A DNA stretch of 64,000 bases from Takakia lepidozioides (lineage: Eukaryota > Plantae > Bryophyta), in contig CM060732.1 in NCBI GenBank assembly GCA_030704615.1, positions 44,268,001 to 44,332,000 of the forward strand, read 5' to 3'. The translations under genes were made by a program, and so were the position numbers. The notes beneath the pieces were generated by a model. It ran no database searches and was not told the origin of the DNA. It was given only the letters and a program-made list of their open reading frames with translations. Shown in pieces: positions 1 through 58,084 of this stretch. Positions within the stretch are counted from its first letter, which is position 1, and every line of letters begins with the position of its first letter.

Positions 1-26
1 CTCACCTACCCTCTCTCACGGCTACG

Positions 27-347
27 ATGGAGCGTCTCGGAAGGCTGCTAGCAAGAGGTGAGAGTGGCTATGGCAGTCCGAGGATTTGTTGCATTGTCAC
101 AGACTTTACACAGCCAGCTCGGGTCTTTAGCACGGGGGTGGCAGCTCAAGGAAATTTGGATGGGGAGACAATCTCTGAAGGTAAAAAGGCCCCAGAAGAG
201 AACAGGAGCATTAAAACACCCTGGGTGTTGAAGCTGAATCCACTCACACGGCAACTGGCCGACAAAGTGGGCTCTCTGGTGACTACTCAGTACACTTCAG
301 ACGTCTTTGAAAGGAACGTGATTCCGAAGGCTTTCGCTGTTGTTCAG
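27..347 (+). CDS. First coding exon with mitochondrial-targeting-like N-terminus (shared leader exon)
   Basis: ATG at 27. MERLGRLLARG...PARVFST is Arg-rich at the start with an R-x-F-S cleavage-like motif. Donor CAG|GTTCGC at 347/348, phase 0 after 107 codons. Confidence 0.6.
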
Positions 348-1346
348 GTTCGCTCTCACTCCATACTTATTCGCCATGTTATGTGATGGTGTATCTCCTC
401 GGGGAGGGGGGTGGGAAGAGAAAGAGAGAGTGAGAAGGAGACGATTGTAGTCACCCGAAAACTGGGAGGTTGCCGGCCTTCCCCGCAATGCATGATGATA
501 TTTCGCTATCCGCTTTCTTTCATGATTTTCGTCTTCCTGTGTTCCGTTGCTGCATATCTCTCGGATGGAAGCATCTCAGCATGGGCAAATGGGAGGCATT
601 CAGCTTGCTGCGAGTGCAGATTTAAGGTGTCTAGAGTTGGCATGGACATTTGGAGGTGGGCTTAAAGGTTATGGACTAAGGCCCCAATGTTGAACTTCCC
701 ATAATTTGAACATCCTCATTTTGCTGTTCAGAATTCTTCGGGAAGGAACTGTGCTACAATTGTTCTATCCTCCCTTAAGGTGCACATGTTGGTGAAGTCA
801 ACCTTGACATGTGTTCCATCTGTCACTTGTCACAAGGCACATGCTTTTGTTGTGGGTATTTTGCAGAAGTGGATTTAGTTCTCTATGTGGGACTGATTTG
901 GGGCATCTGAAAATTCTCTGGGTGTACGATGCAGTGATGGCAATAGCATAGGAAGTGGGTTTTGACTGGGTGCAACACTTTTGTTGTCCTTTTGAAGAAT
1001 ACATTCTGACCACAGCTAACCAAATGGTCGTGAGTGCAGAAAGAGATTTGCTGCAGAATACTTATTTTAGTTGGGGTACTTAAAAACTGGTGACTGGTAT
1101 TGGGTGAGCCATGGTTGTAGCCAGATTATCTTGGCTCAACCAAAAAAGAAACTATTTACAGCTCTAGTAGAAGACTGCAAAAAATGGGACTGCAAAAGGA
1201 CAGACAGTGAATGTTGGTGTGAACTCTCTATGCAATCTGTTAGATCTTAAAAATGCTTCTCCTCCTTCTGTGGGGTGTCATGTGAGCATGTTTTTCTCGG
1301 TACATATAGAGGGTTTCTTTATTAGTGGAGAGGGTTTTGTATTCAG

Positions 1347-2447
1347 TTTATGGATACCGGCTGTCTAACAGGGGCACCTTGCATGCAGGACGATGGAAAC
1401 AGATGTGAAGCAGCCCTGGCAGAAGATGCTGAGCCACAACCAGACCCAGATGGGCACTGGAGCAGCTCCTTTGAGGCTCAGTCAATTGATCATGCAAAGT
1501 GCCTACATGCGCGAGTACTTGCCTTCCGCAGAATGAGTACTTGTACTATGTGGGATAGAGAAGGGGAACCCTGCATTGAAAAGCACACGGACTCCCTGCC
1601 CATGGAGGAGTCAGCCAATCTACAAACCAATAAAAATCCAGAGGGAACTCTTGATGGGGATCATAAACTGTTTGTGAGGCGAGGCTCCAATTTGTGTCCT
1701 CCCACTAGAACACATAAGGATGACCTTGGTGGTTTAGAGATGGATAGAAGTGAGGCTGGATTTGAGGCTGCGGTATGTCAAACAGGGAATATGCACCCGG
1801 ACGATGATGGAAAATATCGGAAGATTATGGAGGTAGTTGCTGACCCTTATGTGCTCATAGCAGCATATGAAAGAATAAAATCAGATATTGGGAAGACAGG
1901 CATACATGGAAATTGGTTTGAGAGTACGGCTGAACAGTTGCTCGCAGGAACATATTCATTCAAATCCCTGAGGAATGACAGCATCCCGAAACCAGGAGAA
2001 GCTAGGGACACCAGACACAGTCTTGTCATAAGCCCTGGGGACCAGATAGTACAAGAAGCGGTCAGAGCCGTTATAGCGAGGATATATGAGTCAACAGATG
2101 GAGAGGATCCAGAGGGGCTCGGGGCAGGCACCTCCTGCCATTCGGCACTAAGAACCATAAAGTCTACATGGAAAGGAATAAACTGGTTTGTTCAATTTGA
2201 GATTCAGAAGTCTGACCACACCTTAGTTCAGAAAAGGCTTATAGGCCTTCTTTCACGGAAGATAGCAGATCAACGCATTTTGGATCTGTTGGTGCAGATG
2301 TTCGATGCAGGTAAATTAAGTGTGGGAAGACCTCCAAACGATGAGATAGCACAAGGAAGTGTCCTGGCACCTCTTTTGGGCGACATCTACTTCCAGCAAT
2401 TGGATGAGGAAATAGACCGAATCAAAAGGGAGTTTGACAGAAACTAA
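1347..2447 (+). CDS. Nuclear-encoded group II intron maturase-like exon (RT0-RT4 only; no YADD, no domain X)
   Basis: Open 365-aa frame with LIAAYERIKS, IPKPG, DQIVQEAVRAVIARIYE, CHSALRTIK..W..INWF and QGSVLAPLLGDIYFQQLDEEI, typical of mitochondrial-lineage maturases (MatR/nMAT). Acceptor TTCAG|TTT at 1346/1347, phase 0. Confidence 0.8.
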   Translation, partial: FMDTGCLTGAPCMQDDGNRCEAALAEDAEPQPDPDGHWSSSFEAQSIDHAKCLHARVLAFRRMSTCTMWDREGEPCIEKHTDSLPMEESANLQTNKNPEGTLDGDHKLFVRRGSNLCPPTRTHKDDLGGLEMDRSEAGFEAAVCQTGNMHPDDDGKYRKIMEVVADPYVLIAAYERIKSDIGKTGIHGNWFESTAEQLLAGTYSFKSLRNDSIPKPGEARDTRHSLVISPGDQIVQEAVRAVIARIYESTDGEDPEGLGAGTSCHSALRTIKSTWKGINWFVQFEIQKSDHTLVQKRLIGLLSRKIADQRILDLLVQMFDAGKLSVGRPPNDEIAQGSVLAPLLGDIYFQQLDEEIDRIKREFDRN

Positions 2448-2548
2448 GAAAGGTCACAGAGTACAGTGTGAAATGGGCCAGTCTTGCATTTACAAGGCCG
2501 CTCTGCAAGCTTAATGCTTATGTGGTGACAGGAGTCATTCCCTATTAG

Positions 2549-2791
2549 GCAACCAACCATGACCAGTTGATAGCCGCCTTGGATAGGGTGCTGTTTGCAT
2601 TATTGCTGCTACAAATAGCCCTATTCATTTTCTTCTGGACACAAGTCCTTCGGAGAAGGATGCTTGACATCTTCGACATCAGTGAGGGGGAAGACAATTA
2701 CAGGCTGCTGGAGCTCATTCCTGTGGTGATTGTGGGCCTGACGAGTTGTGTTGGGAACCAGATAATGGCAAGATTGTGGTGGCTGGCTTAA
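2549..2791 (+). CDS. Putative terminal exon encoding two transmembrane helices (possible host-gene exon)
   Basis: Acceptor ATTAG|GCA at 2548/2549, phase 0. Encodes ATNHDQLIAALDRVLFALLLLQIALFIFFW...LIPVVIVGLTSCVG...WWLA*. No in-frame ATG precedes the first helix. Confidence 0.5.
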   Translation, partial: ATNHDQLIAALDRVLFALLLLQIALFIFFWTQVLRRRMLDIFDISEGEDNYRLLELIPVVIVGLTSCVGNQIMARLWWLA

Positions 2792-5182
2792 GAAGTAAGA
2801 TGGATTATCAGTTTTTGAGCTTGAAAGTTGTTCTTAATGGTGGAAGCTGCTGTGCAGGATTAAACTTCAGTGTTGAAACAAACACATTTTGAGGCATCTC
2901 TTTCAATTCCACACCAATACTCGGAATTTGCCTTTCGTTATAAGTACTTGCAAAGCACGTTCATTACATCGTTGAGTCAACATAGATTGGCAGTGCTTGC
3001 AAAGTCAAGGTTCTAGTTTAGAGATTGTAACTAGAATCTCCATACAACACGACCCTCAAGCGCCCCAGCGACGGGTTGAGGACGTTGGTCCCCCAATACC
3101 ACAGGCCACTCAGGCAAAATTCATGGGGGTGTAGGCATGTTCCAGGTGACCCCACCTAGGGCAGACCATTGGATCTGCCTGTAAATGAGCAGTACTCATG
3201 TGGCTAAGTGGAAACCTTCTGACCCTAACTCGGTGATCTTGCATCCCAGACATCCCTCACTGCACCCCTCAAAGATAAACTTGAGCCTCAGGGGGAGGTT
3301 ACTTCCAAAGAGGTTATTTTCTCCTCTCACTGTTGTTAAGGGGCCTAGTTTATGATCTCACAGGTATTTCCCTTTTTTAAGTAAAAACAAAGAAAAGGTA
3401 AAGTACATGTATGTGTGAATGGATGGAATAAGGAGAGAATATACTTGGGAAACGCAATGATAGGAACCAAGATTCGTGTGAGGCAGGTGGGGATATAGTT
3501 CACGGTACGGAAGATGGTACTGCTGTATGTGTTGCTGCAGCAGAGGACGCGGCTGGTGGTTGGTGGTTGCTCCGCTCTTGCAACCATCGCACCCTTCCGT
3601 GCTGCCCTCTCTCCCTGCGTGCAATCTCGCACCTCGATCCATCGATCCACCTGCGTTGGTGGGTTGCAAGTTATGGGAGGTCTCGGGCATCGTTGAGAGA
3701 CAGACCAGTTTGTGGGTGCTGCTGCATTATTTGCAGCTAATAGTGTTCTGTAGTGTGAAGAAACAGCGGGGCTTCTGTGATCCATTGGGGTACTTGGGCT
3801 GAGGGGGATTTTTCAATTGGGATCATGTGTGGTCTGTCCCTGGTAGGTGTGGTGGTGGATTGGACGTAAATTGTGCACAAGACGTGAAGTGCGCAGGTGG
3901 GCAGGGGTGACTCAACGGCAATCTCGGCAATCTCTTGGGGGCCTCGGACAGAAACATCTTTACGAGCGATGCAGCTGCAACTGAGTAGCGCCCACGTCGG
4001 TCAGCTTCCTCCTTATAGGACCATTCCATCCCTTTTCTTTGGTGGAGTCCGCACACATTCTGCAGTTGAGGATGCCAGGAGCTATTTCAGGAGCACGTTG
4101 CACCACCGTTCTACCCATGGCAATTGGAGGAGGCCACCCCCTCTTACGGCTCAGAGATCGCTGTCTCACACTGTACATTCAGTCTCTGAAACCTGAACTT
4201 TTTATATATGCTATGCAAATTCTCGGACAAGAACTTGTAGGATGATGTGCAGCAGGTTTGAATGAGATCTGTTTGCTGAAGGCTTTAATTCGCTGAGATC
4301 TTGGTAAGCACTGTACTTAGAGCTACAGTGCGGCATTGACCTTAAGTTGCAATGTTCTGTCTGAGATCTAAAATCGTTTACTTGCATGCATTCCACAACT
4401 TGTTGAAAGCTGGTTGGAAACTTACTTGATGAGAGTGCTTCTGAACTCGGACATACGATCTTGGCACTCAGGTGAAGGGTTGCAAAATAAAAGTGATAAC
4501 GAGAGGAAAAATGTCAGTTGAGCATACGTGTGCAGAAGCTTACAATTGTGTTTGATTGATTCGCCAGAGGAACTTCTTGAGGTATAAGAGGGAACGACAG
4601 TATAGAGATGAAAAGTGAGCAGGAAGTCAGAGACAAGCCCCATGAATTTCTTCTGGAGAGCGCTGGATTACTCCATTCTTTCCAAGTTAGTGACACAGAA
4701 ATTATCAGTCTATGTTGTAGCCAGACCTTCAGTAAAAATCCTTATAAGCCAACCAAACAGTCATGAAGAAGGTTTGGGTTGTTATTTATCAGGCTTTCCT
4801 TGCTTCTTGAAGGGGACAAGGCATCTACAATTTGTCATTTTGTCACTTTGGCTTTTACTTGAACTTTGCTCGATCTATTGCAAGGCATTATCACTTTTAC
4901 ACCTTGGAAGGGTTAGTTTTCTTCACAGCACAAATTGAGTTTCACAATAATGTTTATTCTAGCAACCTACTTGTTTGTTACTGGACTCACCAGAGAGGGG
5001 AGGAAGAGAAAGGAGATAATCAGTAAGCAGGGAATGACCTTGCCTCGTGGTTTGCTGCACTACATAACAACTTCTTGATTCAGAGTGCTGGGAATGTGTT
5101 TTACAGTTGGCCATAACAATTGAAGCAGGCAACTTAGAAGGTTTTGGACTAAGATACCTGTGGTGGTTGTGGGAGCATACAG

Positions 5183-8100
5183 GCTGGGTGCATAGAGACA
5201 GACACAAGGGGCGTGACAGGCCTGTTCAAGTTTCCTGATGAGGCAGTGCCAACAAGTTCTGGTTACCTACCAGTGAGCGATTCTAGCAGCTCTCGACTTT
5301 TTTATGTGTTCTATGAAGCAACCAACACCACTACTGGTCTACCTGACACACCCCTGTTGCTATGGCTGAATGGAGGCCCGGGTTGCTCAAGCCTAATAGG
5401 GTGCTTCTATGAGCTTGGCCCCTGGAGGATCAGCGAAGATGGAAAGCTCCAGCCTAATCAGGCAGCCTGGAATCGCAGGTTCACCTTCATCTACGGCTTG
5501 TTTTAATTAGAAGGCAGCCATATGAAAAATATGTTTGATGGTTTATGGTACAAGATTTCTCTACTGTGGTGCTACTTTGTTGTTCTACTGTGTCCCCATG
5601 GTTCCCCTGGTCCTCCCATGGATGGAGCAAATTCATTGACCTTCTCCTTTTCCTGGAGAAGTTTCTCTGAAGCTTGCACACACACTTTAAGTTGAGATTG
5701 TTTACTTTGAACCAGGGATGGGCTGTCCCTGATCCTTGCATATTTGTCTCTCTTCCTCTCTACCGCATTGCCCCATCCAGAAAGCTTTCTTTTCTCTCAA
5801 TTTATCCCCATGCCCTGCCCTCTTTGTGGCCGTGAAGAAAACTTGTGAGGCTTGCCTAGGACATGGATTTAGAAGGTGGAGGTAGAAATCTCGGCTGATG
5901 AAGATGGACCCCAATAAACAGGTGTGGAGTCTTATTTGTAGACAACCCAGTTGGAACAGGATTCAGTGTGGCAGTGTGCAATGAAGATGTACCTAAGGAC
6001 CAGCATACTGTGGCTGCCCATCTCTACCATGCGTTGCAATTCTTTCTTGCCCAAAACCCAAGCTTCAAGCTACGTCCCCTTTTCTTAGCAGGCGAGAGCT
6101 ATGCAGGAAAGTACATTCCGGCTTTGGCATATTATATTTTGAAGCAAGTCAGCTGCAGTGGTGAACATCCCCTGATCTCACAGTTGGCAGGGATTGCAGT
6201 GGGCAATGGCTTCACAGATCCTCGCATCCAGGTGCTGCAGTATGTTCCAATGTGCTCACTTGGTTCTTTCTTTACCCATGGCGTTGAGGATGCTATCTTC
6301 TATTTGATAACTCAGCCTCATGTGCATTGTATTCTGGAGTCTGTAGGATGGACTGTTTACTTGTCAGTACCAGGAAAAACCAACAACGTACTTCAGGAGA
6401 ATTTGAAAGAGATTCTTGTCCATGACTGAGGTCTAACTGGGTAGCAGCTACCTGCATAAGGCACTCCATCTCTATGGACTATTTGGGTTTGATTTGTTCC
6501 ACTGTGTCCAATGGGCCTTCTGCAGACTTAATGAACTTATCTACTCAATCCCTTTCCACTCTGAAATTAGGTTGTGGTTGATAAAGATAAACAGTGAACT
6601 GGATGGGTTCCACATGTTTCTATATATTGGAGCTGCAACCCATAGTCTCGTCCTTTCACAGTGTAGGCACTGTTATCAGACCCTTTGTATTTCATAATGT
6701 GGTATAACTATGTGCTGCTTTAAGTCTGCTTATGATGGTGACAGATAGTGGCTTTCTCTTCCCCTTCATGGGTGATGGACGAGCTCCCGACTCTGGTCTT
6801 TTTTGGAAAAGATTGTCCCTGTTTGTGGTTTTGTTCCGATGCAGTTATCCAGATGGTAGTAGCTGAATGGTTATGGTATCACGCCACATGTTGGAAACAG
6901 GTGCAGGCGCATGCGGAAGTTTCATACTCTCTGGGTCTTCTTGACAAGCAGCAGAGTGCTTGTGTCCAAGACATGGCTCGGGTTGTTGTTGATCTCATTG
7001 ATAAGTTAGTTTCTCTCGCCTTCATGAAATTTCAGACTCTTTGTTCCTATCTGTATATGTCACATTGCCTTAAGATAGGCTGCCGTTCCAAGGCCGACAT
7101 ATCTGGTGCCAATGGACGGTAGGGAGGAGTGGTTGAAAGCGCATGAGATAAGAACGAAGCTGTGTGGATGGATAGAGGAGACCAGTGGCGTTGCAACACT
7201 GCTAGACATACGCCGCTCTGCCAAGTACCACCATCGCGAGGTTTAATCCTTTTTCTTCTCAAGGTGTTTTTTTAGTTTTCAGTTATGGACTGAAGTTTGA
7301 AGTGGAGGGTCCAAACCCGGGCCTTTCTTCCAGACTGTTCCTCCCTCCTATCTGTTTTTAGACTCCAGCTTGTTGAATTGAGAGCTTGACTAACAAGGAG
7401 AGAATATGTGGCTCTATAGTATGAGGTGCCATAAACATGGTATGTGAGTCTGCGATAGAGTCTGTGCATCCTTAGTTCCAGCATGGCTGTGTAGGACAAG
7501 GAATGACATATTTGTGTTGCCAACATTAAAGGATGGCACTGAGTATTTGGCACCCTTCCTCAACTCGGCTAGTGTGAAAGCCACTCTCAAGGTGGATGAG
7601 GCTGCTGATGATTGGGTGAGCTGCCGCCCCTCCATTCGCAGCTTGTTGGCTCAGGTTGTCTCATCTCTCCTTATTGAATTATGTTTACACAGGCTCATCT
7701 CCCTTCATTAGGCCATATGGGGTACACCAGTTTGCTTCTCAGCTTCATATGCATAGCAAGCACAACAGCAATGCCTGAATTTGCTGAAAGTTTCTTCGTT
7801 ATGGATTAGAGTACTAGTGCCTAGTTCAGCTCATGTACTTCACACAAAGTATGCTGCACTAATAGAGCATGATGACAACCCCAGGTGTTTATCAATTTCC
7901 TGAGGCATCTTATATTGGTCCATATTCAAAGAAGATGAGTTGAAAGGGACACGATTGTGGTTGTGTTGAATGTTAAGGATACAATGAAAAGCAGCAAGTG
8001 GATGGTAGAGGCAGTGCTTAAGGGGGGTTACCCGGTGCTGCTGTACCAAGGCATCTATGATGCCAAAGATGGTGTTGCTGGCTCTGAAAACTGGATGCGC

Positions 8101-8488
8101 ACCCTTGAGTGGGACAATGCTGCCTCATTTTGGGAAGCAAAACGGGAAGTATGGAGGGTGAAGGGCAAGCCAGCAGGATATTGGCGACGGGATAAAAATC
8201 TTGCACACGTGGTGGTGCATGGTGCTGGCCATCAAGTGAGTTCATCTTTTTCTTTGTTACAGCTGGCATAAGAAAACCATTACATTTGGCCTTAATGGTT
8301 GGCAAGTCCTTGCTGTGGAGGTACATTAACATGTTAGTATGCACATTATAGGAGATGCAGTTGGATTGATGGCATATGTTGTGGTGTCTCAGGTGCCAGC
8401 AGATCAGCCAGTTATCTCACAGACCATGATTGAAACATGGATAGAGGAACAACTGAAAGGTGGCAACCATTGCAACAATGACCTTTGA
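5183..8488 (+). CDS. Serine carboxypeptidase-like protein (peptidase S10, SCPL50-like); 5' exon not resolved
   Basis: Exons ~5183-5478, 5922-6231, 6901-7003, ~7122-7239, ~7532-7654, 7978-8235, 8393-8488. Motifs WLNGGPGCSS, FVDNPVGTGFS, GESYAG (Ser), GIYDAKD (Asp), GAGHQVP (His). Confidence 0.92.
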
Positions 8489-11800: not shown

Positions 11801-14800
11801 AGGTGTCCAGAGATAGAAAGGTAACACCAAAGCATACTATATAATGATATATGCGTAATTCAATTCATTAACGCTGTTGAAACTTTTAATGGGGTCGAAA
11901 TAGCAGGACTAGGCTGTAGGCAAAGTACCTTGACAGTGCCTAGATGTTTTCGCCACTGCAGCTTACGGGGTGCCTTCACGGCATGATAGCGCTGTGCGTA
12001 GTCCTCCAGCAGCTGCTCCACCACCTCTGGAACTCGCAAAGTCTCTGCCTGCACCACAGCCACAGCCACAGCCCTGTGATGGGAAAACATGAGCACTAAC
12101 AACACAAATTGGTGCATGTATGTTGGCATGCCTCCTGTGCTGAAAACTAGACCGGGATTTGTATATTTACCTGGAAAGGAGGCCAAAAGAGGGAAGAAAT
12201 AATTGTAGCATCGAGGACCTCCAAGGGCAGTTGCAGGTCTCCTCTACTGGAGGCTGGTCCAGTCAATGTCACATCAAATCCAGTGTGTGGTCTGAGAACA
12301 TGTGTGCTTGCCACGCGGGCACTGGGCTCACTGATTCCCAGTGACACACCAGGTGCTGGGCGCGTCAAGGCCACGTCAAATCCAGTGTGTGGTCTGAGAA
12401 CATGCATGCTTGCCGCATGGACACTGGGATCACTGATTCCTGGTGACACACCAGGTGCTGGAGGAACTGTTGGATTGGCTCCGGACCCTTGAAAGGCAAC
12501 ACTAGCAGTTGCAGGCCCTACGGGGATGGGCAAAGGCGGAGTGGCTGTGCCGCGCTGGTTGAGAGCAGCTGCAACCGAAGCCTTAATATTCGAATTAATC
12601 CGCTTGGAGTCAGCCACATCTTTCAGCATGATTTCGCAGCCATGCATGTTACTCTCACCGAACCGCAGCTAACCCAACAATGCCACAACCAAATTGCCTT
12701 CAGAAAAGCATGCACATAAAAAATCTTATCAGGCTTGATGGCCTTTCTGGAAGGACTTCATTGTTGCTGTCAGCATGGTCGTATTGGATTGAAATTATTG
12801 AAGTGACAGAGAGAAAACACAGCAAAGGTGATTAACAAACCTTGCAAAATAGATCTGATCCTTGAACAAGCTGTCTAAGCTCTAAGATGGTTTAGTACCA
12901 AACAGGAATAGGTAGAGGGTAACCTTCAAAAGTTCCAGGGTGCGAATATCACGATCAGTATCGTAATCTGACTTGTTCAGCAGTTTTTCAGCCAGCATGA
13001 CGCGGTATTCATTGACAAATACCTCCTTTGAACCATAGATGCCCACCAGCATGCTAATGATGTCCATCAATCTGCGACTCTTACTGGTGCGTGATGGGTC
13101 TGCCTCCACGGGATCGGGTTCCCACCTGTCAGTCAAAGAACCAATTCTGTGGAAGGGGGACAAATGGGCTGAAAGCAAGACAGACATAAGGAGAAGAGGA
13201 AGAAGAGGAGGAAGCAGAAGCTGAACAAGAGGAAGAAAGATGGATTTGTTGTACTTTGCGTGCAGTCACCAGCAGCTATAGACCCGGAAGCAAGGAGGGA
13301 AGTACAGACAGACAGAGGAACAGGCAATTGCCATCCCTGACACCTTTGAATGAGGTGGGACGTAGACCCAGTAAATGAGATCCTCTCACCTTCCAGATGT
13401 TTCCGAGGTTACTCAGGGTCTAATTGCTACAAGGATGTACAAAGACCAGTGTACTCGTTAGATAATGTTCAGGTAGCCTTTGGCCATAAATCTGTCTGGG
13501 GTGGAGGAGCAGAGGGGGGTAACAAAGGAAACGAGAAGGGGTCCCACTCTCAACACTAGCTCTTTAACATATGGTTGAACAAGATAATGAAGTACCCAAA
13601 TCGAGGAGTATCTAATCTAATGGTTCCAGTAATACAGTTCTGTACTCAACCAATGAGATCCATATTCTTCAGAACTAAAACACAGCATTCTAAGCTGAGC
13701 AGTGTGAGAGAATGGAAGGGGGAGGCAGAATGCAGGTTAAGGACAAAAGTATGTACAGCTTAGCAGCTGCCCAAGCCTCATCGCCATCACCGTCGGCGTC
13801 ATCATCACTGTCAGCATTCTCCAGAGCAGTCACGCCACGACTCAGCTCTTCAAAAAGACTTTCCCCCACCCCACCCAGTCCCGCAGACCCCCCAGCTCCC
13901 GTGTCATCAGTGAGCATGGTCACAATGCAGCGAATTGTATCTTTGCGACCACGAAGATACTCTTTAATAGGCTCTCCCACTGCCTCCAGGACCACGCCGG
14001 TGGGATCCATTGTGCGCAGTGCTTTGATGGTTGACACATATTGCAGCAAAATGTCTGTGGTTGCTGCTCCTGCTGTCAGCAACCTCTGCCGCAGTGCTGA
14101 GCGAAAAGAATCCACCAACTTGGCGTGCTGCCCTGTATTTACCAAGCACTGCTGCAAATCCTCTATTGCTGCCAGGCTGACTCCCACACACCCATAAATG
14201 TCTATCAGCCATGATTTGCAGATGGAGGTGAGCAGCCAACAGTATTGTGTGTTCTAAAGTTGCTTCCATGTGCTTTGACATCAGAGGAGATATACCCCAG
14301 GTCATAGTTTGCCAGCACTCCTAGCTTGGTATGAACTGGAGAAGTCACTAGAATGTGAAAGCAATGAAATGTATCATTCAGAAGTGGTTCATATCTCCAA
14401 ATAAGCAGGACCATCTAAGCAAAGTTCCTCCATGAGGTAATCAAGAGGGCTCACCTCTCCGGGTAGTCAACAATTATGTCAAAAAGCTCACTAATCCGGA
14501 AGTCTCCAAGTGTCTCATAGGCAAAAAACTGCAGCCGTAGCCGCCACCTGACAACCCTTTCTGTCACAGTTTCATCACTTCCAGCAGCAAGCAATGGTAG
14601 TGAAGTCAGGGGTGAAGGAAACGCAGACGGTGCTGTCTTGAGGCAAGCAGGTGGCGCTCCAGAAGACGCCAGCATAACACATACGAAGCGCAATGGAACT
14701 GCCTGTACACCATGCCCATTGCCTCACATTGAGCCCACTGCCTTTCAAAGCATGAGCATGACAGAGTCAAGAGAGACAACAGGGTGACCAGGTGTGGTGC

Positions 14801-17295
14801 ACAAAGAGGTGATGATGGTCTAGAAAACATATCAGTGACAGGAGTGTAAAGAACAAAAGCCTACCTCAATCCAGCGCCGAATTGGACCCAAGACAGGCTT
14901 TTCGTAGCGCTTGTTAGCTATCGCATGTATTTTGACCTGCACAATCCTTACAAGTATGAACAGAATGTGCCAGTTTGCATGGTCTTTGCTGACAGGATAA
15001 CCCAGCAAATAACAAACACTGCCTCTAAACGGGGCAACCTTTCGAAGTACAGCTCACCACATAGCTTCACCAAATATTCTGTCGTTCAAACATATGTTTA
15101 TTACACCTGGTGCTGGAAATCCAGGGTCCTTGCACTCCCAGTTACACAAGGACAATTAGGCCAGGAGAAAGACGTTAATGGCAGGAAGACACCCACTTTC
15201 AGAAGTGAGTAGATTGCAGAAGCATAGCCTTCCTCACTCATGGCAGCAAACCCAAGTTGGCGGAGGTTTCGGACCACGGAGCCCACACCAGCTACCCACT
15301 CCTCGCCAGCTACAGTCACCACCTCATGCAAGGTGGCTGCACCTGCTCCCAGCCTCAAATCACTACTGGCTACATAATCAATGCCCTCCATGTCCTGGAC
15401 TCCATCTGAGTCATCTACATTCCTTGGTTTGCGACTGTCATGTGAACTGCCATTGACCTCCATATCATCTGGCCAACCAGAAGTGCGGCGACTGCTGAGT
15501 ACACTCTCCATGTCATCATCTTCCTCACTGTGGTGCCCAGAGCTCACTGTGCTCCCATCTGCATTGTCATCACTCACACAACTACCATGTGGGCTGTGGC
15601 TGTGCTGTCTCACTGCTTTGCTGAACTCCTCCAGCCTAGCCTTGAAGTAGAGATTTAGCACCTCTGTCACACAACACATAAGCAGGCCATGATGAGAGGT
15701 GCAGAACAGCCACTGCTGCACCATGGAGAACTCCACATTGCATATATCTAGGCCTTTATCCAGCAGTTTGTATGGACAAGTCCCCAGTCTGGCAAACACT
15801 ATCTTAAAGTACCTGTGAGAGGGGTATGAACATAGCATTTTTATGATGAGACACTGCACTCTCCCGGCAGGGTATGGGAATCACTACAGTATCACCAAGA
15901 AATGTTATCTGAGATGCCCGCGCACAACTTGAAGAAGGACCAATTACCTGAGAAATGTTGTGGAACACTGGTAAGGAGCAGTGCACTGACAGTTGTGCGA
16001 TAGCGTGGAAGCAGACATCCAACGTCACTAGCACATCCACTGCCCCCAAATATGACACCAGCCAGTGTTGCCAAGCACTCCTCCTGTGAAAACTTCGCCT
16101 CACACACCTCCGCCAGCGCTTTGGGGAGGGTTGCTTGCACCCACTCATTCAGCTGCATCAGGTCACACACTGCCATCAATCTTCCCCAGTGGCATGTAGG
16201 GCCATACTGCTGAATGGGAGAGACCCTGCAACATGCAATGCCCATCCAGCATTCACATGAGATGCAGAAACACCACTGCCCCTCAAGTCTTGCCTCAACG
16301 AATCATACTGGTGTGACCAAGTGCAAACAATGAAATCTGTTAACTGCAGCAATTATATTTTCAGCCTCAACCTCAGCCTAACAACCTTGACGCAGTATGT
16401 ACAACTTAGATTCTCCATGCAAACTAAAGATCCCAAGCATTCTACCTACTAACCACATCCTGGACCACCCAAACTTAAATCGCATATTTACATCTTTAAG
16501 GCCACTGCCATCAGCAACACAGCCTGGAGTATATCAAAAACTACCTGGACTGATCACACATTCTGGAAACGGAGATTCAATATCAGGGACACATCAATAC
16601 ATTTCTCCACATTTGTGTTTGAAAAATACTTCCCAGAATCAATACAACGAGATGCAACACGAGATTTAAGCAAAGGAGAGAGACACGCAAAAGCGGGCTT
16701 CACTTGCCTTGGTCGGTCTTATCACTTTATCTTGTTTTAGGTTTAAAAACTCGTCGAATTGTTGCCACAACTTGGACACTTGGTGCTGTTTGAACGTCCT
16801 CTGCAACCCCCTCACAGTAGGAACAATGAATCAAGAGATATTTCTAGAGCTCAGGGTTGACCTCAATAAAATTCTAGGCATTGGTGGATGCAAACACACT
16901 ACTCCAATCTCCATCACAATACCTGATCAATCTCCCAAGTTAAGGGACGGTTTTTGGAGCCCGACAACCATCCCTAATTCGTCCCACAATGTGCATTGAT
17001 CCTTCCTATGAGGTTCAACCTCCTATGCCGCATTTTTTGAATTATGTCCGCCCATAGACTTACTAATTCAGAGAGAAAGTACCTCAAGAGCATCCAGAAA
17101 GTAGTTCACGACAAGATGGGCCAGGCCTTGGTCACACAGGGTTCGCACACTGCTAGCAAAATCCATGCTCTCCAACTGAGATCGCTTCTCGGGGCAAGAC
17201 GAAACGGATTCAAAGGATCGAAACAGACCCGCCGAGAGAAGAGAATATTCCTGCCATGCTTGTCTCACTAGTCCCAGCTTCTCCCTGGCCTCCAT
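8858..17295 (-). CDS. APC2: Anaphase-promoting complex subunit 2 (cullin-like), multi-exon
   Basis: Motifs RISELFDIIVDYPE, RLLTAGAATTDILLQYVSTIKALR, YLRGRKDTIRCIV, WEPDPVEADP, IYGSKEVFVNEYR, CEIMLKDVADSKRIN, LQWRKHLGTV. C-terminal GMLTNFDSLPLDRIHNMLKMF winged helix. Stop at 8858-8860. Confidence 0.95.
10484..11516 (+). mobile_element. 5'-truncated LINE (RT C-terminus + CCHC zinc finger) in APC2 intron, with 18-bp TSD
   Basis: IRPALEYGSAIW, AVRGEFGI and CPLCGQSEDSIHFLIHC motifs, with a frameshift near 10900. Identical CACTCTATTCTGACCATC at 10466-10483 and 11517-11534. Confidence 0.9.
12259..12461 (-). repeat. 102-bp (34-aa) in-frame tandem duplication inside an APC2 exon
   Basis: PAPGVSxGISxPSxxxASxHVLRPHTGFDVxLT occurs twice. 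CAGTGTGTGGTCTGAGAACA at 12281 and 12383. Confidence 0.9.
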
Positions 17296-18395: not shown

Positions 18396-20532
18396 TCACC
18401 AATAGTCTCCACATGAGCACACCCCATTTTTGAAGTGATGAAAGCGGTTGGCATCTCTTGCAACAATTTCTCGCCCCACAATCTTAGAGATGAATTTGGT
18501 GGCTGTGTGGCAGTCGCCACATACCCGAAGGTTCTTGATTATGCAGATACGCGTTCCAGGGGGAGTACTGATGAGGCCAAAAGCAATGGCCAGCTTCTCA
18601 CTGTGGTGGCAGAGTGCTTGTTCCTTCGTCTGCTGATCTGTATCAAGCAAGACATACCGTGCGTCAGGGACATATCCTGCCGCCTTTATCTGGAGGGTCA
18701 AATTCTCCAACTCTGCATAAATGTCCTCTGTCCGTGGGTGGGATCTATCTTCCACAAAAAATGTATGTACTCTCTTATCAACCATTATCCAGCTGTGCCC
18801 TGGCTCCTTTTTCACACCTCTCTCTTCCATAGCCTTTCTGACCTTTGCTACTTCGTCACACCTGCCAGCTGCAGCATAGATGTTCGAAAGCAGGACATAA
18901 CCTGCAGAATCTTGTGGTTCCAACTTAAGAACATGTTCTGCGGCACGTTCTGCCAGCTCCACATTGCCATGGATTCTGCAGGCGCCAAGCAAGGCACCCC
19001 ACACCTGAGCACCTGGTTTGAATGGCATTTTGTTGATAAAATCCTCTGCTTCATCCAAGCGCCCTGCACGGCCAAGAAGGTCAACCATGCACCCATAGTG
19101 CTTTCCAGTCGGAGTGATGCCGTACTCCCTCATGGAACGGAAGTACTGACCACCTTCATCTACTAGGCCCATGCGGCTACATGCAGAGATCACACCAATG
19201 AATGTGACCTCGTTTGGCGTCATGCCTTCCAATTGCATCTGCTCAAACAGTTGGAGGGCCTCCTCAATATGCCCATGCTGGGCATATGCTAAAATCATCG
19301 CATTCCAAGAGACCACGTCTCGTTGGAGAATTTTGTCAAACACTCTTAGTGCATTCTCTACACTCCCGCCCTTGGCATACATATCAATAAGGGCACACCC
19401 CACGGAGACATCGGACTGAAATCCAGACTTGATTATGTCGGCATGGACCCCCTTGCCTTCTTCCAGGGCTGCTAGGGTTGCGCATGCATTGAGAACACTA
19501 ATGAACGTGAGCTTGTCAGGCTTAATCCCTTGTATTTGCATCTGCCGAAATAGTTCGATAGCCTCCTCAGCATGACCATGCTGAGCAAATCCTGCAATCA
19601 TTGAAGTCCATAAGACCATGTCTCGCTTAGGCATTTTCTGGAACACTTGACGCGCATCCGCCACACTCCCGCACTTGCAATACATGGTGACAAGGGCAGT
19701 CGCCACCCGGACATCTGAGTCGAATCCAGCTTTGGTGATGCCGGCATGGAGTCGCTTGCCCTGGTACAGAGAAGTTGGGCTGACACACGCCTTGAGAACG
19801 GTCATGAAAGTGACTTTGTCAGCCTTCACGCCTTCTCGTTGCATTTGCCAAAAGAGTTCAAACGCCTCTGCGCTATTCCCTTCCTGAGCAAGTCCTGCAA
19901 TCATCGCCGTCCATGAGATCACATTCCGTTTAGGCATTTTGTCAAAAGCTTGGCGCGCATCCTTAACACTCCCGCACTTCACATACATGCTGACAAGCGT
20001 GTTTCCCAGAAAAATGTCTGGCTTAATTCCACTTTTGATGAGGTGAGCATGGACCTCCTTTCCATCTGCCAGGGCATTCGAGTTCGCACAAGCTTGTAAT
20101 AGAGAAGCATAGGTATCGGAATATACTCGAAAACCTCTTTGCTCCATGAGATCCAGAATGTGCACTGGCAGCTTCAACCGACTTTCCTTGCACAATGTGC
20201 TCAATTCCCCACTCATGTCAGACTCCCCCTTTGCTACTTGTCTTGGGTCTCCATGGGAAGCAGTGGTGATGGTGGACGTGGCAAGACTGATACCCGTGCC
20301 CCGGATTTGATGCCCAACAGCCAAATAGGTCTGATTCCATGCTTGAAATCTCACCGCCCTGCATGATAAGCATCCAACAGATCAATGTCGTAGTACCCCT
20401 CTGGCCCTCCCGCAGAATTGCCGTGAACCAGCTTTACTAAAAATTTACAGGTTGTTAGGTAAATCTGTTTACCGACGAAGGAGATGAAAGCGGGACGTAC
20501 CGAACACTCCAGCTTCGTCTCAAGAAGCCCAT
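18396..20532 (-). CDS. PLS-class PPR protein with E and DYW domains (C-to-U organellar RNA editing factor)
   Basis: PLS repeats, PG box PGHSWI, HSEKLA, NLRVCGDCH and terminal CSCGDYW. Probable short first exon 20532-20501 (MGFLRRSWSVR), spliced in phase 2 to 20358. Confidence 0.95.
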
Positions 20533-48668: not shown

Positions 48669-48759
48669 TTGTGGGTGTCACGCATTAAGGGGTTCGCTCT
48701 CGAGCGAAGCGTTCCTCTTTCTGTTTGCCTCTTGCGGCCTGGGCAAGCGGACAGCAGTC

Positions 48760-50354
<1,595 letters not shown>

Positions 50355-53724: not shown

Positions 53725-56700
53725 ATTTTTATTTTTTTTATTTTTATTTTTTATTTTTTTCCAGAATCAGGGGGTTATATCCCTGATTTATTTATTATAA
53801 ATTATTTGATGGGGAAAAAAATTAAAACCCCGGTTACACCATGAGGTACACACATTGTGATCAGTGTAATAAGAACCAAACTCTTCGAACGGAGATTAAG
53901 TCCAGGATACAAAAATAATTCCTATCTGACTCTACAGTAAATGCAAAAAGAGCAAAGTTTGTTTCTACGAACCAAACAGCCTCCCTGTTGGCTAATCCAG
54001 GAGACCAAAAAACCGGGCACACTGCCCAAGACCTGAAACGAAGCTAAGGAGAGACGAGTGTTCTGTTGGATTTTCTAAGACTGTCTGAAAAGGCAGGGGA
54101 GTAGTGACGATGAGAGTAATTAGTCTTTTGACCTTCTCCAAAATAGAGATTGTGATCTATCTGTAGTGAAGCTTGGAAGTTGTCGAGGCGGGCTTCACTG
54201 TGCTTCCAGTTAATGTCCCTTTCAAATTCGGGGGAAAGAGTGTAGCTGCGAACGGAGATCTCGCCAGGCTGCTGGGGGGGAGGTCACTCCAGTAGCATCG
54301 GTCCTGCACAGGGCTGCTGCATACGATCCCATGTCTACCCCAAGTGTGCTGAAAGTTCCTGTGGATGGCCTCCGCGTTCGTGGCATCCCGCTGTATGACT
54401 GCACATATTTTGGCCCACGCCTTCCTAGTTTCAGTTTGTAAATCAAGAAATATAGTGGCCAGGAGGGCAAATATCGAAGTTGTATCTCCTAGAAAGGTAT
54501 TCTTGCATCTTAGTTTCCATAGATGCCACAAAGCTGATGCTCTTAAGGTTTAAAAAACAGGGCAGTTGATGGCTCTGTTTTTAGTGGTTGGATCATAGTT
54601 TAAGAGAATGATTGTGTCTGAAAGAGAAGAGGGGTTCCAGTTTTGATAGAAGGCTTTGATATAGGGCCAAATCTTTGCTGGGGCTTGGCAGGAAAGGAGG
54701 CAATGTTCTATCGATTCGATTACTGCAGTTGAACAGCAATCACTTAAAACGGAACCCTGAAACTGTAGCCATTCCCCAACTTTGAGAACCCTATTCACTA
54801 TCTGCCATAGGAAGGATGCAATCTTTGAAGTGCGGGATTTAATCCATACTGAACCCCAAATAGTCTTCCAGTTTTCATCACAGAAGTTGTACAATCCCCA
54901 TCTGGCTTCCCACTTCTTGTTCATAGGTTGAGACACAAATAAAGCTTTGTATCCTTTCTTGGTTGTGTAGGCAAATAAGGGTTTTGGAGCATTGTTGAAT
55001 TTCTAGGACCATTCTTGGGGGTCAATGTCCATCTCTGCAAGAGGTCTACCCAGAATCTAGACGAAGGTGTTAGAAAGAAACCATGACCTGGTTGTTGTAG
55101 TAAGGGGTGGTATAGGATCCATGGCTTTATCTGGGGCTGTCCAGCAGCAGATTCTCACCGGCGTTAGAGTCATGAGATTCAAGTGAATTGGGTTTGGGGA
55201 AGTAAGTGTAAGCCTAAGAGAGAAAGAGTCAATAGAGAAGGTGTATACTGACATATCATTCTGACTGAGTTCATCTAGAAACAGAATGGTAAGCTTGTTT
55301 TGCAGAATGACTAAAGCCCAAGAGTTGGGAGTTGGCTGCGGAGGGCCAAGTGCCAGGGTAGCCAGCCACTGTGGAAGGATTGTTTGAATAATATCCTGGT
55401 ATCCTTTGGATGCACGGGGCATCCCCACAAAACGGGCCATCGAATCTTGAGAGATAAGACTATCTCCCGACCATATGTTATGAATTTGTCTGACTCCGAG
55501 GCAGTCCCATTTGGACCATCTCATAGCCTGGTTTTTCTGAGGAGTAGTTAGAGGTATGTCATTGAGAAATAGGTGCTGTCTTTTGATCTCATAGAAGTTG
55601 CTTGGCTGGGCTTCTGTGAGCAGTTTTATGAGCCTACCCCATGTCAGCCAGATATTGGACCATAGAGAGGAGCTCACAGATTTAAGGTTGAAGCCTTGAG
55701 TGATCCAGCGCAATGAGGGGGTCCAAGGGGTGTTTTTGAGTGGTGAGGAATTGGCAATGTGGTCATAGACCAAAATTTTCCAGCATCCTCCTTTTGGTCC
55801 AAGAAAACGCGGTATCCATTTTCCAAGGAGGGCCACTATCTGTAACTCAGGATCCAGCATCCCCAGCCTTTTTTTTTTTTTGGTAAACAGATCTGTAACC
55901 AAGCTACTTGTGGTCTCTTGTTGTGATTGGAGCATTCTGCTCCCCATATGAAGTTCCGGAGGAGACGTCTGATTTCTTGCATCTGTTTAGAGTTCGAGCG
56001 CCATGAGGAGGCATAGTACCATAGACCAGCTGAATGAATTTGATTCACCACTAAGGCTCTACCAACGAGAGAGAGATGTTTTGACCCCCAGTAGGTCAAT
56101 TTTCTCTTTAGCTTGGTTAATGTAGAGGCAAAGATTTGTTGGTCTGTGAGGTTAATTCCAAAGGTATAACCTAACAAGGTGGTTGTTTCGCCAGGCTGGA
56201 GCCAACTGAGACCCTGATCCACCCCCCAAGAGGGTGGTGAGCCCATAGTGGATGCCGCTAGGTCACCAACGAGCAAGCCATAAGTTTTGTTCCAATTTAA
56301 TTTGAATCCCGAGGCTTTGCAAACGGTACGCAGAGTATGTCCTGCTTGGTCCAAGTTTTCTGACATCGCTTGCAGCATTAAAAAGGTGTCATCTACGAAC
56401 AAGAGTCAATCAGGTAGGTGTACTGGCCAGTGATATAGTTTGAGACCCTAAGGCCTTTTATGAATTGGTTTTGCTGCAACATATACCCTAGGGTATTTGC
56501 CACTACTAGATTCAGAAAGGGTGAGAGGGGACATCCCTGTCTAACCAATCGCTGAAGAGGGAAGGAAGAAGACAAGTGGCCATTTACAGTAACCCTACTG
56601 GTTGAAGAAGTAAGAAGAATCTTAACCTTGTTGCAAAAAGATTGAGGGAAGCCAAGTTTTACCAGGGCTGCAAGCAAGTAAGACCATTCCACCCGATCGA

Positions 56701-58004
56701 AAGCCTTAGAGAAGAAGGGCAATGGCTTGATTGGTCCTTAGGGCATAGTCTGGGTTTTCCTATGCAAAGAGGAGGTTGTCCAGAATATACCAGCCTTTAA
56801 TAAATCCTGTCTGGTTGGGCCGAATAATGGATGGTAGAAGAGGTTGAAGTCTAAAGGCGAGAGCCTTGGCTATGATTTTGTAGGCGACATTCAGAAGGGT
56901 TATAGGGCGGTAATTCGAAATATTCGTTCTATCCCCCTTTTTGTACAACAAAGTAATTACCCCTTGAGCCATTGAAGGTGACATCTGACCTTGCTAAAAC
57001 AGATGATTGGCCATAGCTGTAAAATCCCCTGAAATCTCTGGCCACAGTGCTTTATAAAACTCAACAGAAATGCCATCTATACCAGGCGATTTGTTGTTCT
57101 ACATCTTAGATAAAGCTTCTTCTAATTCCAATTCAGAGAAATCTCCCTCAAGCCGCGCGGCATATTCAGGAGAAAACATGGTAGGGGTGTGAATCAGACA
57201 GGTTGTTTGGTCATTAGAAGGATCTAGGGAGATGTTGTCACTGTGGAAAAGGTGCTGGAAATGGCCACCAGCAAGGGCCGCCATCGATTTAGGTGTTGTG
57301 TTTGAGATCCCGGATGGCTGGGCAACAAGTTCAGAGATGGTTTGAGAAGCTCTTCTCAATCTGGTTTTGTCGAAGAAGTATTTTGTCATCTTTTCCCCTT
57401 TTGTTGACCAGTTAACCCCCGCCTGTAACTTCCACTTTCTCTCCTGGATTTTGTGGTGAATGTCAAGATTGTTCCTGGCTTGGACATAAGTTTTGTAAGT
57501 ATCTTCATCGCACCGACTGGATTCCAATGCAGATTGGAATACTTTGAGGCATTTAGATAAGGCCCTAACCTTTTTCTTTCGAATGAGTGCTAATTCTCGG
57601 CTCATTTTTTGGCTTTCTGTATTGACCGCTTTTAGCCTGGCCAGGAAGAGCTCAGTTGGATTTAGGTCTGGGTTTCCAGCCTGAGACCAAGCCTGCAGGA
57701 GACCCTGTTTGAAGGAGGGTAATTTGAGGAGGAAATTATTCAGCTTGTAGAGGCCTCTGCCCCGTCGGCATGAATGAGGGATTGAGATAGAAAGGGTGAT
57801 TGGTGCATGGTCAAATCCCAAGAGAATGGGTTCCTGCGGGGCTCTTTTAGAGAATTGTACCAAATTGAGGGAAAGGTAAGCTCTGTCAAGTCGAGCCATA
57901 CTAAGGTCGGTGAGGGTTCTATTATTGGACCATGTAAAGGTGATGTTGGATGCTTGACCGAAAATAGGTGCTGCCTCCTTGAAAAAGTAATACCCGCCCA
58001 ACAC
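53725..58004 (-). mobile_element. 5'-truncated, frameshifted L1-clade LINE (APE, RT, zf-RVT) with A-rich tail
   Basis: FTWSNNR..ARLDRAY..FDHAPI (APE); NYRPITLLN, FSKAFDRVEW, RQGCPLSP, FVDDT (RT); ESIEHCLLSC. A-rich tail at ~53725-53760. Confidence 0.93.
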
Positions 58005-58008
58005 TGAT

Positions 58009-58084
58009 TTAGGGTTTAATGTTCATGTCCAGATTAAAATGTTCCAGATTTAGGGTTCAATGTTCCCAAGTGACTAAACCCTAA
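58009..58084. promoter_or_regulatory. Telo-box cluster upstream of the 58426 gene
   Basis: TTAGGGTTT at 58009-58017, TTAGGGTTC near 58049, AAACCCTAA at 58076-58084. Confidence 0.45.

What the first reader, a model, noticed from the sequence alone, without database searches (positions are those of the whole stretch)
27..2791. Group II intron maturase exon nested in a nuclear gene and sharing its mitochondrial-targeting exon
Seen: exon 1 (27-347) ends in phase 0. Two downstream acceptors are both phase 0: 1347 opens a maturase RT exon, and 2549 opens a two-TM exon with no ATG before its first helix (joined reading: ...KAFAVVQ|ATNHDQLIAALDRVLF...). Known precedent: in grasses, rps14 inserted into an sdh2 intron and borrows its presequence by alternative splicing. 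Inference: an organellar maturase moved to the nucleus by landing in the intron of a gene for a mitochondrial membrane protein. One locus would then make two unrelated mitochondrial proteins (~473 aa and ~187 aa).
Basis: partly seen in the sequence, partly recalled or inferred. Interest (0 to 1): 0.85.

Follow-up and report, generated by a model that had tools for sequence, protein, structure and literature searches.

The report
Half-maturase gene with orphan membrane exon
A plant (probably the moss Takakia) carries in its nucleus the front half of a mitochondrial intron-splicing protein joined to an acquired import signal, and a second, unidentified membrane-protein exon just behind it may share that signal by alternative splicing, though no RNA evidence could be obtained.

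Summary
Exon 2 (1347-2447) is a real group II intron maturase, but only its front half: RT0-RT4, stopping before the catalytic RT5, with no RT5-7/X match in the window. It is MatR-like (35% over 138 aa) and is cut where Pelargonium nmatRT is cut. Its own ATG gives an acidic start, so it needs exon 1, which looks like a mitochondrial presequence. Exon 3 (2549-2791) scores as coding by several tests, has two hydrophobic helices, no Met before the first, and third-position GC like exon 1 and unlike exon 2. So the nested, alternatively spliced reading is the best single one (about 0.45). But exon 3 has no homolog anywhere searched, so a 'host mitochondrial membrane gene' is unproven, its acceptor is middling, and a decayed host exon or a junction from 1772 also fit. 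Nuclear maturases in mosses, split matR and exon sharing (rps14/sdh2, rps7/trx-m3) are each known; their combination would be new. The scan has noted about eight other nuclear maturases in this genome, none described as nested.

The parts
1..26 (+). CT-rich leader, probably 5' UTR; promoter lies outside the window
   Evidence: no AG acceptor before the ATG (inference that it is UTR)
27..347 (+). Exon 1, 107 codons: Arg-containing amphipathic N-terminus, R-x-F-S-T cleavage-like motif at aa 32-36, then acidic stretch; no homolog found
   Evidence: hydrophobic moment highest at aa 1-11; 5 R/K vs 3 D/E in 35 aa; coding score; no homolog
348..1346 (+). Predicted spliceosomal intron 1 (999 nt), donor GTTCGC 97th percentile, acceptor 97th percentile
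   Evidence: approximate plant matrix from memory, ranked against all GT/AG of the window; non-coding
1347..1808 (+). Exon 2, N-terminal about 154 codons: acidic, Cys-rich linker, coding-like, no family match; GC3 same as the RT part
1773..1778 (+). Internal phase-0 donor GTATGT (98th percentile) just before RT0; basis of rival model b
1809..2447 (+). Maturase RT0-RT4, ending one helix after the RT4 motif; no YADD, RT5-7 or domain X
2448..2548 (+). 101-nt spacer: 3' UTR of the maturase form and end of the long intron of the skip form; branch-like TTAAT at 2511 and GTGAC at 2525; competing AG at 2530-2531
2549..2791 (+). Exon 3, 80 codons, two hydrophobic helices (about aa 11-29 and 56-74), no Met before helix 1, orphan
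   Evidence: no homolog
2795..2800 (+). Donor-like GTAAGA 3 nt after the exon 3 stop (possible 3' UTR intron)
2859..2864 (+). ATTAAA, the only poly(A)-like hexamer before 3400; none in the 2448-2548 spacer

Best explanation
One nuclear transcription unit with one targeting exon and two alternative 3' splice sites. Splicing 347->1347 gives a 473-aa mitochondrial precursor holding the RT0-RT4 half of a MatR-like group II intron maturase (exon 3 is then its 3' UTR). Splicing 347->2549 skips the insert and gives a 187-aa precursor with two C-terminal membrane helices. The maturase half came from an organellar group II intron ORF and landed between exon 1 and exon 3. It cannot polymerise (no RT5 YADD); it most likely binds intron RNA through RT0 and the fingers and helps mitochondrial intron splicing together with a separately encoded RT5-7/X half, as proposed for Pelargonium nmatRT/nmatRX. 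Shown: frames, phases, RT identity and truncation, coding signature of exon 3. Inferred: both junctions, targeting, direction of insertion, partner protein. The maturase part alone (exon 1 + exon 2) I put at about 0.8; the full two-product model at about 0.45.
For: Only acceptor 1347 opens the RT frame in phase with donor 347, both 97th percentile; the RT ORF's own ATG gives an acidic N-terminus. RT0-4 intact over 366 codons, folds like maturase RTs (Foldseek E 1e-7), yet DNA similarity to matR is barely detectable (61-65% over 88 nt), so it is old and kept open, not a fresh numt. matR scores 96 bits vs 68 for the best bacterial hit over the same stretch. Pelargonium nmatRT also holds RT up to IV (PMC5174742). 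Exon 3 coding tests; GC3 exon 3 0.60 and exon 1 0.51 vs exon 2 0.41, both halves of exon 2 alike. Neighbouring carboxypeptidase acceptors score 64-99th percentile, so 81 is in range. RT0 binds intron DIVa (PMC5678591).
Against: No RNA evidence. Exon 3 has no relative among 1.84 billion representatives, Pfam, NCBIfam, PDB or the ESM Atlas, whereas known hosts (sdh2, trx-m3) are conserved genes. A stronger AG at 2532 lies before 2549 and gives a 12-codon dead end in phase 0. Exon 3's frame stays open back to 2441 apart from one TAG and that gap scores weakly coding, which a decayed exon would also give. The presequence has 3 acidic residues in 35 and no targeting predictor was available. The partner gene is only an unchecked scan note.
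Confidence: 0.45

Rival explanations
1. Single-product gene: exon 1 + exon 2 make the targeted maturase half; exon 3 is the decaying remainder of the gene (perhaps a duplicate) whose first exon was captured, and now lies in the 3' UTR.
For: Exon 3's frame is open from 2441 to 2788 with one TAG at 2546, and the gap has frame-biased coding score; acceptor 2549 is middling and preceded by a better AG; no homolog. Scan notes describe several chimeric genes with borrowed targeting exons in this genome (unchecked).
Against: 80 codons with both helices and a strong codon signature are still intact while the insert has diverged almost beyond DNA recognition from matR; the gap signal rests on 35 codons and its chi2 is flat (p=0.82), GC3 0.44 like exon 2.
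Confidence: 0.27
2. Three-exon host: exon 1 + 1347-1772 + exon 3 (329 aa). Only RT0-4 is the insert, sitting in a 776-nt second intron and expressed when donor 1772 is not used.
For: Phase-0 donor GTATGT at the 98th percentile lies 36 nt before RT0; explains the non-maturase 142 codons.
Against: GC3 of 1347-1772 (0.40) matches the RT part (0.42, p=0.66) and differs from exons 1+3 (p=0.009); some bacterial maturase alignments run weakly across the site.
Confidence: 0.12
3. Exon 3 is a chance T-rich ORF in the 3' UTR of the maturase gene.
For: 217 stop-free stretches of 80 codons or more occur in the window's six frames, and three others reach a similar two-helix score; no homolog; low Atlas recognition; the ORF was picked after the fact.
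Against: T is concentrated at codon position 2 (0.46 vs 0.19, 0.19); 1 of 3000 shuffles; above nearly all non-coding windows in the local codon model.
Confidence: 0.08
4. The whole locus is a non-functional organellar insert or pseudogene, and exon 1 splices to something else (or the gene begins upstream of the window).
For: Maturase truncated, no catalytic motif; nothing upstream of position 1 can be read; no expression data.
Against: 366 open codons with conserved motifs and nuclear-type codon score; no group II intron RNA or nad1 exon nearby; truncation matches a transcribed precedent (PMC5174742).
Confidence: 0.08

Closest known systems
Pelargonium nmatRT (split nuclear matR; Grewe et al. 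2016, PMC5174742)
   Same: Nuclear, acquired targeting signal, RT ends after subdomain IV, RT5-7/X elsewhere.
   Different: Here RT0-RT1 are also present, the presequence is a separate spliced exon, the lineage is a non-seed plant (an independent event), and the partner gene is not verified.
Grass rps14 in the sdh2 intron (PMC1543663) and Passiflora rps7 in the trx-m3 intron (PMC7488351)
   Same: Organellar ORF between a targeting exon and a downstream exon, both acceptors in phase.
   Different: Those have cDNA or PCR-proven double splicing and a conserved host; here neither is shown, the 'host' is an orphan and the guest is half a maturase rather than a ribosomal protein.
Nuclear maturases of plants: nMAT1-4; 12 loci in Physcomitrella, 8 in Selaginella (Guo and Mower 2013 as cited in PMC3927076)
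   Same: Intron-free maturase ORF in the nucleus with N-terminal extension.
   Different: nMAT1-4 keep domain X and are described as self-standing ORFs; this one lacks X.
Mitochondrial MatR (mat-nad1i728g2, family F17, superfamily SF10-11-17-28; PMC10012718)
   Same: Best-scoring reference obtained: 35% identity over aa 227-364, nearly gap-free.
   Different: Only seed-plant matR was obtainable, and by a pattern aimed at it; sister maturases (mat-nad4i461, mat-cox1i44, nMAT3/4) were not sampled, so orthology is not shown.

Membership tests
Group II intron maturase/RT | RT0-RT4 sequence blocks and fold | tested here: met
Group II intron maturase/RT | RT5 (YADD), RT6-7 and domain X | tested here: not met
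   stop at 2445; no match in six frames of the window or in 2441-2800 read with X at stops
Group II intron maturase/RT | ORF inside a group II intron RNA | tested here: not met
   no Rfam intron match in 1-5200 at E<=5
MatR (mat-nad1i728g2) | Groups with matR to the exclusion of other plant maturases | tested here: inconclusive
   higher score to matR than to bacterial RTs; tree lacks other plant maturases and has long branches
Split nuclear maturase (nmatRT type) | RT ends after subdomain IV | tested here: met
   PMC5174742
Split nuclear maturase (nmatRT type) | Nuclear location with spliceosomal context | tested here: met
   intron-containing carboxypeptidase and PPR-DYW neighbours, GT-AG sites
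Split nuclear maturase (nmatRT type) | Mitochondrial targeting signal | tested here: inconclusive
   composition, amphipathy and cleavage-like motif fit; no predictor or experiment
Split nuclear maturase (nmatRT type) | Separate cognate RT5-7/X gene, and loss of the mitochondrial copy | not testable with these tools
Split nuclear maturase (nmatRT type) | Transcribed and spliced | not testable with these tools
Intron-nested transfer with shared targeting exon (rps14/sdh2 type) | Guest and downstream exon both in phase with the targeting exon | tested here: met
Intron-nested transfer with shared targeting exon (rps14/sdh2 type) | Both spliced mRNAs exist | not testable with these tools
   no reads
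Intron-nested transfer with shared targeting exon (rps14/sdh2 type) | Exon 1 + exon 3 form a pre-existing host gene with orthologs lacking the insert | tested here: inconclusive
   no homolog for either exon searched apart; exon 1 search limited to 59-187 aa proteins; this genome's proteins are absent from the collection

The most novel reading that the evidence does not exclude
A maturase was split on or after transfer to the nucleus at the same RT4/RT5 boundary as in Pelargonium, its front half sits inside the intron of an undescribed gene for a small two-helix mitochondrial membrane protein, and alternative 3' splice choice sets the ratio between a splicing factor and that membrane protein. 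It would be the first maturase I found expressed by the rps14/sdh2 route and an independent case of the same split.
Probability: 0.35. Interest if true: 0.72.

Novelty: new variant of a known kind. Interest (0 to 1): 0.5.

Why it matters
If both mRNAs exist, this extends exon sharing from ribosomal-protein genes to an intron-splicing factor, and exposes an unknown small mitochondrial membrane protein. Independently of exon 3, a second split after RT4 in a distant lineage suggests that the RT0-4 and RT5-X halves are natural modules that can work in trans, which can be tested because both would be nuclear genes. If only the maturase mRNA exists, it is one more nuclear maturase in a moss, a known and frequent thing.

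Tried and rejected
The message did not name any place as human-like, so searches by reference went on. Joined exon 1+2 and exon 1+3 proteins were not searched; each exon was searched apart. Exon 1 as first exon of mitochondrial ribosomal L21 (resemblance of its last 30 residues recalled from memory): no L21 second exon in the window, no match to Arabidopsis bL21m at E<=10 although that chain is in the PDB set; unsupported, not excluded. Exon 3 as nad1 last exon: shuffle p=0.28 local, 0.13 global; rejected. Exon 3 as SDH4/CybS, Nad3 or Nad4 piece: no Pfam, NCBIfam or PDB match; unsupported. Exon 3 or the spacer as degenerate RT5-7: not above shuffles; rejected. Fold search of exon 3: generic helical hairpin only. 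No paralog of any exon in the window. Viral contigs: nothing. Tree of window, matR and bacterial RTs is uninformative about orthology. The first codon-model run had two training pieces out of frame; one search is the corrected run. Literature searches for Takakia maturases gave nothing relevant.

Full report
Setting. The window is nuclear DNA of a non-seed land plant: an intron-rich serine carboxypeptidase follows at about 5.2-8.4 kb and a single-exon PPR-DYW lies at 18.4-20.2 kb. The scan holds 5085 windows for this genome, about 325 Mb, which matches the size I recall for the moss Takakia; two earlier follow-up notes guess the same. The species is not proven. None of ten window proteins is in the protein collection as an exact sequence, so relatives of this genome may be thinly covered and blanks weigh less.

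Observation. All coordinates hold. Exon 1 is 107 codons from an ATG in good context to CAG|GTTCGC. Acceptors at 1347 and 2549 both open long frames in phase 0 (366 and 80 codons). With an approximate plant splice matrix (frequencies from memory, used only to rank against all GT/AG in the window) donor 347 and acceptor 1347 are at the 97th percentile; acceptor 2549 is at the 81st, inside the range of the six acceptors I inferred in the neighbouring carboxypeptidase (64-99), but an AG at 2532 scores better (95th) and leads to a stop after 12 codons in phase 0.

Exon 2. It matches TIGR04416 (1.4e-19), RVT_1 and LtrA, and its model matches group II intron RT structures. Firm homology runs from about aa 155 (RT0) to the stop, which falls one helix after RT4. 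No YADD, RT5-7 or domain X match exists in any frame of the window, and no group II intron RNA is detected. A DNA pattern built on the window's HSALR motif fetched 23 seed-plant matR loci; they align at 33-37% over aa 227-364 with one gap and score up to 96 bits against 68 for the best bacterial hit. The pattern was aimed at matR and no other plant maturase was obtained, so the correct claim is 'MatR-like', not 'MatR ortholog'; the tree cannot decide. DNA similarity to matR is marginal, yet 366 codons are open and score as coding in the right frame: this fits an old, maintained gene rather than a fresh insert. The cut after RT4 is the cut reported for Pelargonium nmatRT, a transcribed nuclear half-gene whose partner nmatRX carries RT V-VII and X (PMC5174742). 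Unchecked scan notes list about eight other nuclear maturases in this genome, among them an RT-less X gene 31 Mb further on the same piece. Physcomitrella has 12 nuclear maturase loci (PMC3927076), so nuclear maturases in mosses are ordinary.

Exon 1. The first 11 residues have the highest helical moment in the exon, the first 35 hold five Arg/Lys and three Asp/Glu, and an R-x-F-S-T motif follows. This fits a mitochondrial presequence by established rules but was not run through a predictor. The RT frame's own ATG (1350) starts an acidic sequence and could not target it, so exon 1 is needed. No homolog was found; the main search saw only proteins of 59-187 aa. Its last residues reminded me of mitochondrial L21, but tests did not support that.

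Exon 3. T is piled on codon position 2 (0.46 against 0.19 and 0.19; chi2 p=5e-4; intron and 3' flank flat). Its two-helix hydropathy was reached by 1 of 3000 stop-free shuffles, though three other long frames among 217 in the window reach a similar value. A codon model trained on this window's own genes places it above 99.8% of non-coding windows, with frame asymmetry equal to exons 1 and 2. Synonymous GC3 is 0.60 for exon 3 and 0.51 for exon 1, against 0.41 for exon 2 (exons 1+3 vs exon 2 p=0.003; the two halves of exon 2 do not differ, p=0.66). The stop-to-stop frame begins exactly at 2549 and has no Met before helix 1, so it can be translated in full only through an upstream phase-0 exon. 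Against this, it is an orphan in every library, and it is not nad1's last exon or a maturase remainder.

Mechanism. Most likely one pre-mRNA, one donor (347) and two acceptors. No poly(A)-like hexamer lies in the 101-nt spacer and one lies at 2859, so both forms probably share a 3' end and exon 3 is the 3' UTR of the maturase form. The RT0-4 product cannot be a polymerase. RT0 and the finger insertions bind intron domain IVa in bacterial maturases (PMC5678591), so the half-protein probably serves as an RNA-binding partner of a separately encoded X half in splicing mitochondrial introns (inference). I give exon 1 + exon 2 about 0.8 and the full two-product model about 0.45. Rivals: exon 3 as a decayed remnant (its frame is open back to 2441 but for one TAG; 0.27); a three-exon host using a strong phase-0 donor at 1772, with the RT expressed by intron retention (0.12; GC3 argues against); chance ORF (0.08); dead locus (0.08).

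Comparison and novelty. It works like rps14-in-sdh2 (PMC1543663) and rps7-in-trx-m3 (PMC7488351) in layout, but the two defining features, two proven mRNAs and a conserved host, are untested or inconclusive, so I do not file it as a member. It meets the tested features of an nmatRT-type half-maturase. Each ingredient is known; I found no report of a maturase in this arrangement, in a library that lacks most subscription papers.

Limits. Nothing upstream of position 1 could be read.

Noticed in passing
window 181-300: A 120-nt stretch inside exon 1 lies between a very strong phase-1 donor (AAG|GTAAAA, 180) and an AG at 299-300 in the same phase; it could be spliced out in frame, shortening the region after the presequence.
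   Followed up: partly
window 2310-2532: The best-scoring donor of the region (CAG|GTAAAT, phase 1) lies inside the RT just before RT4; joined to AG 2532 it would give a product ending before RT4.
   Followed up: partly
window 2795: Donor-like GTAAGA 3 nt after the exon 3 stop. If used, the junction is about 350 nt past the maturase stop, which could expose only the maturase mRNA to nonsense-mediated decay.
   Followed up: no
window 5183-8420: Serine carboxypeptidase gene (Pfam S10) with at least six inferred introns; I found no in-frame Met or signal peptide before 5213, only a phase-0 acceptor at 5183, so its first exon is unplaced. A 20-nt 90% match between 2717-2736 and 5154-5173 is at chance level (E 0.64).
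   Followed up: partly
window 13690-15860 (-), 18396-20216 (-), about 32070 (+), 48680-49220 (+): Exons that I recognise from memory as APC2-like, a complete PPR-DYW, MSH5-like and cytosolic RPS3-like; gene-dense neighbourhood.
   Followed up: no
window 54160-58020 (-): Broken LINE-like element (endonuclease and RT pieces in several frames).
   Followed up: no
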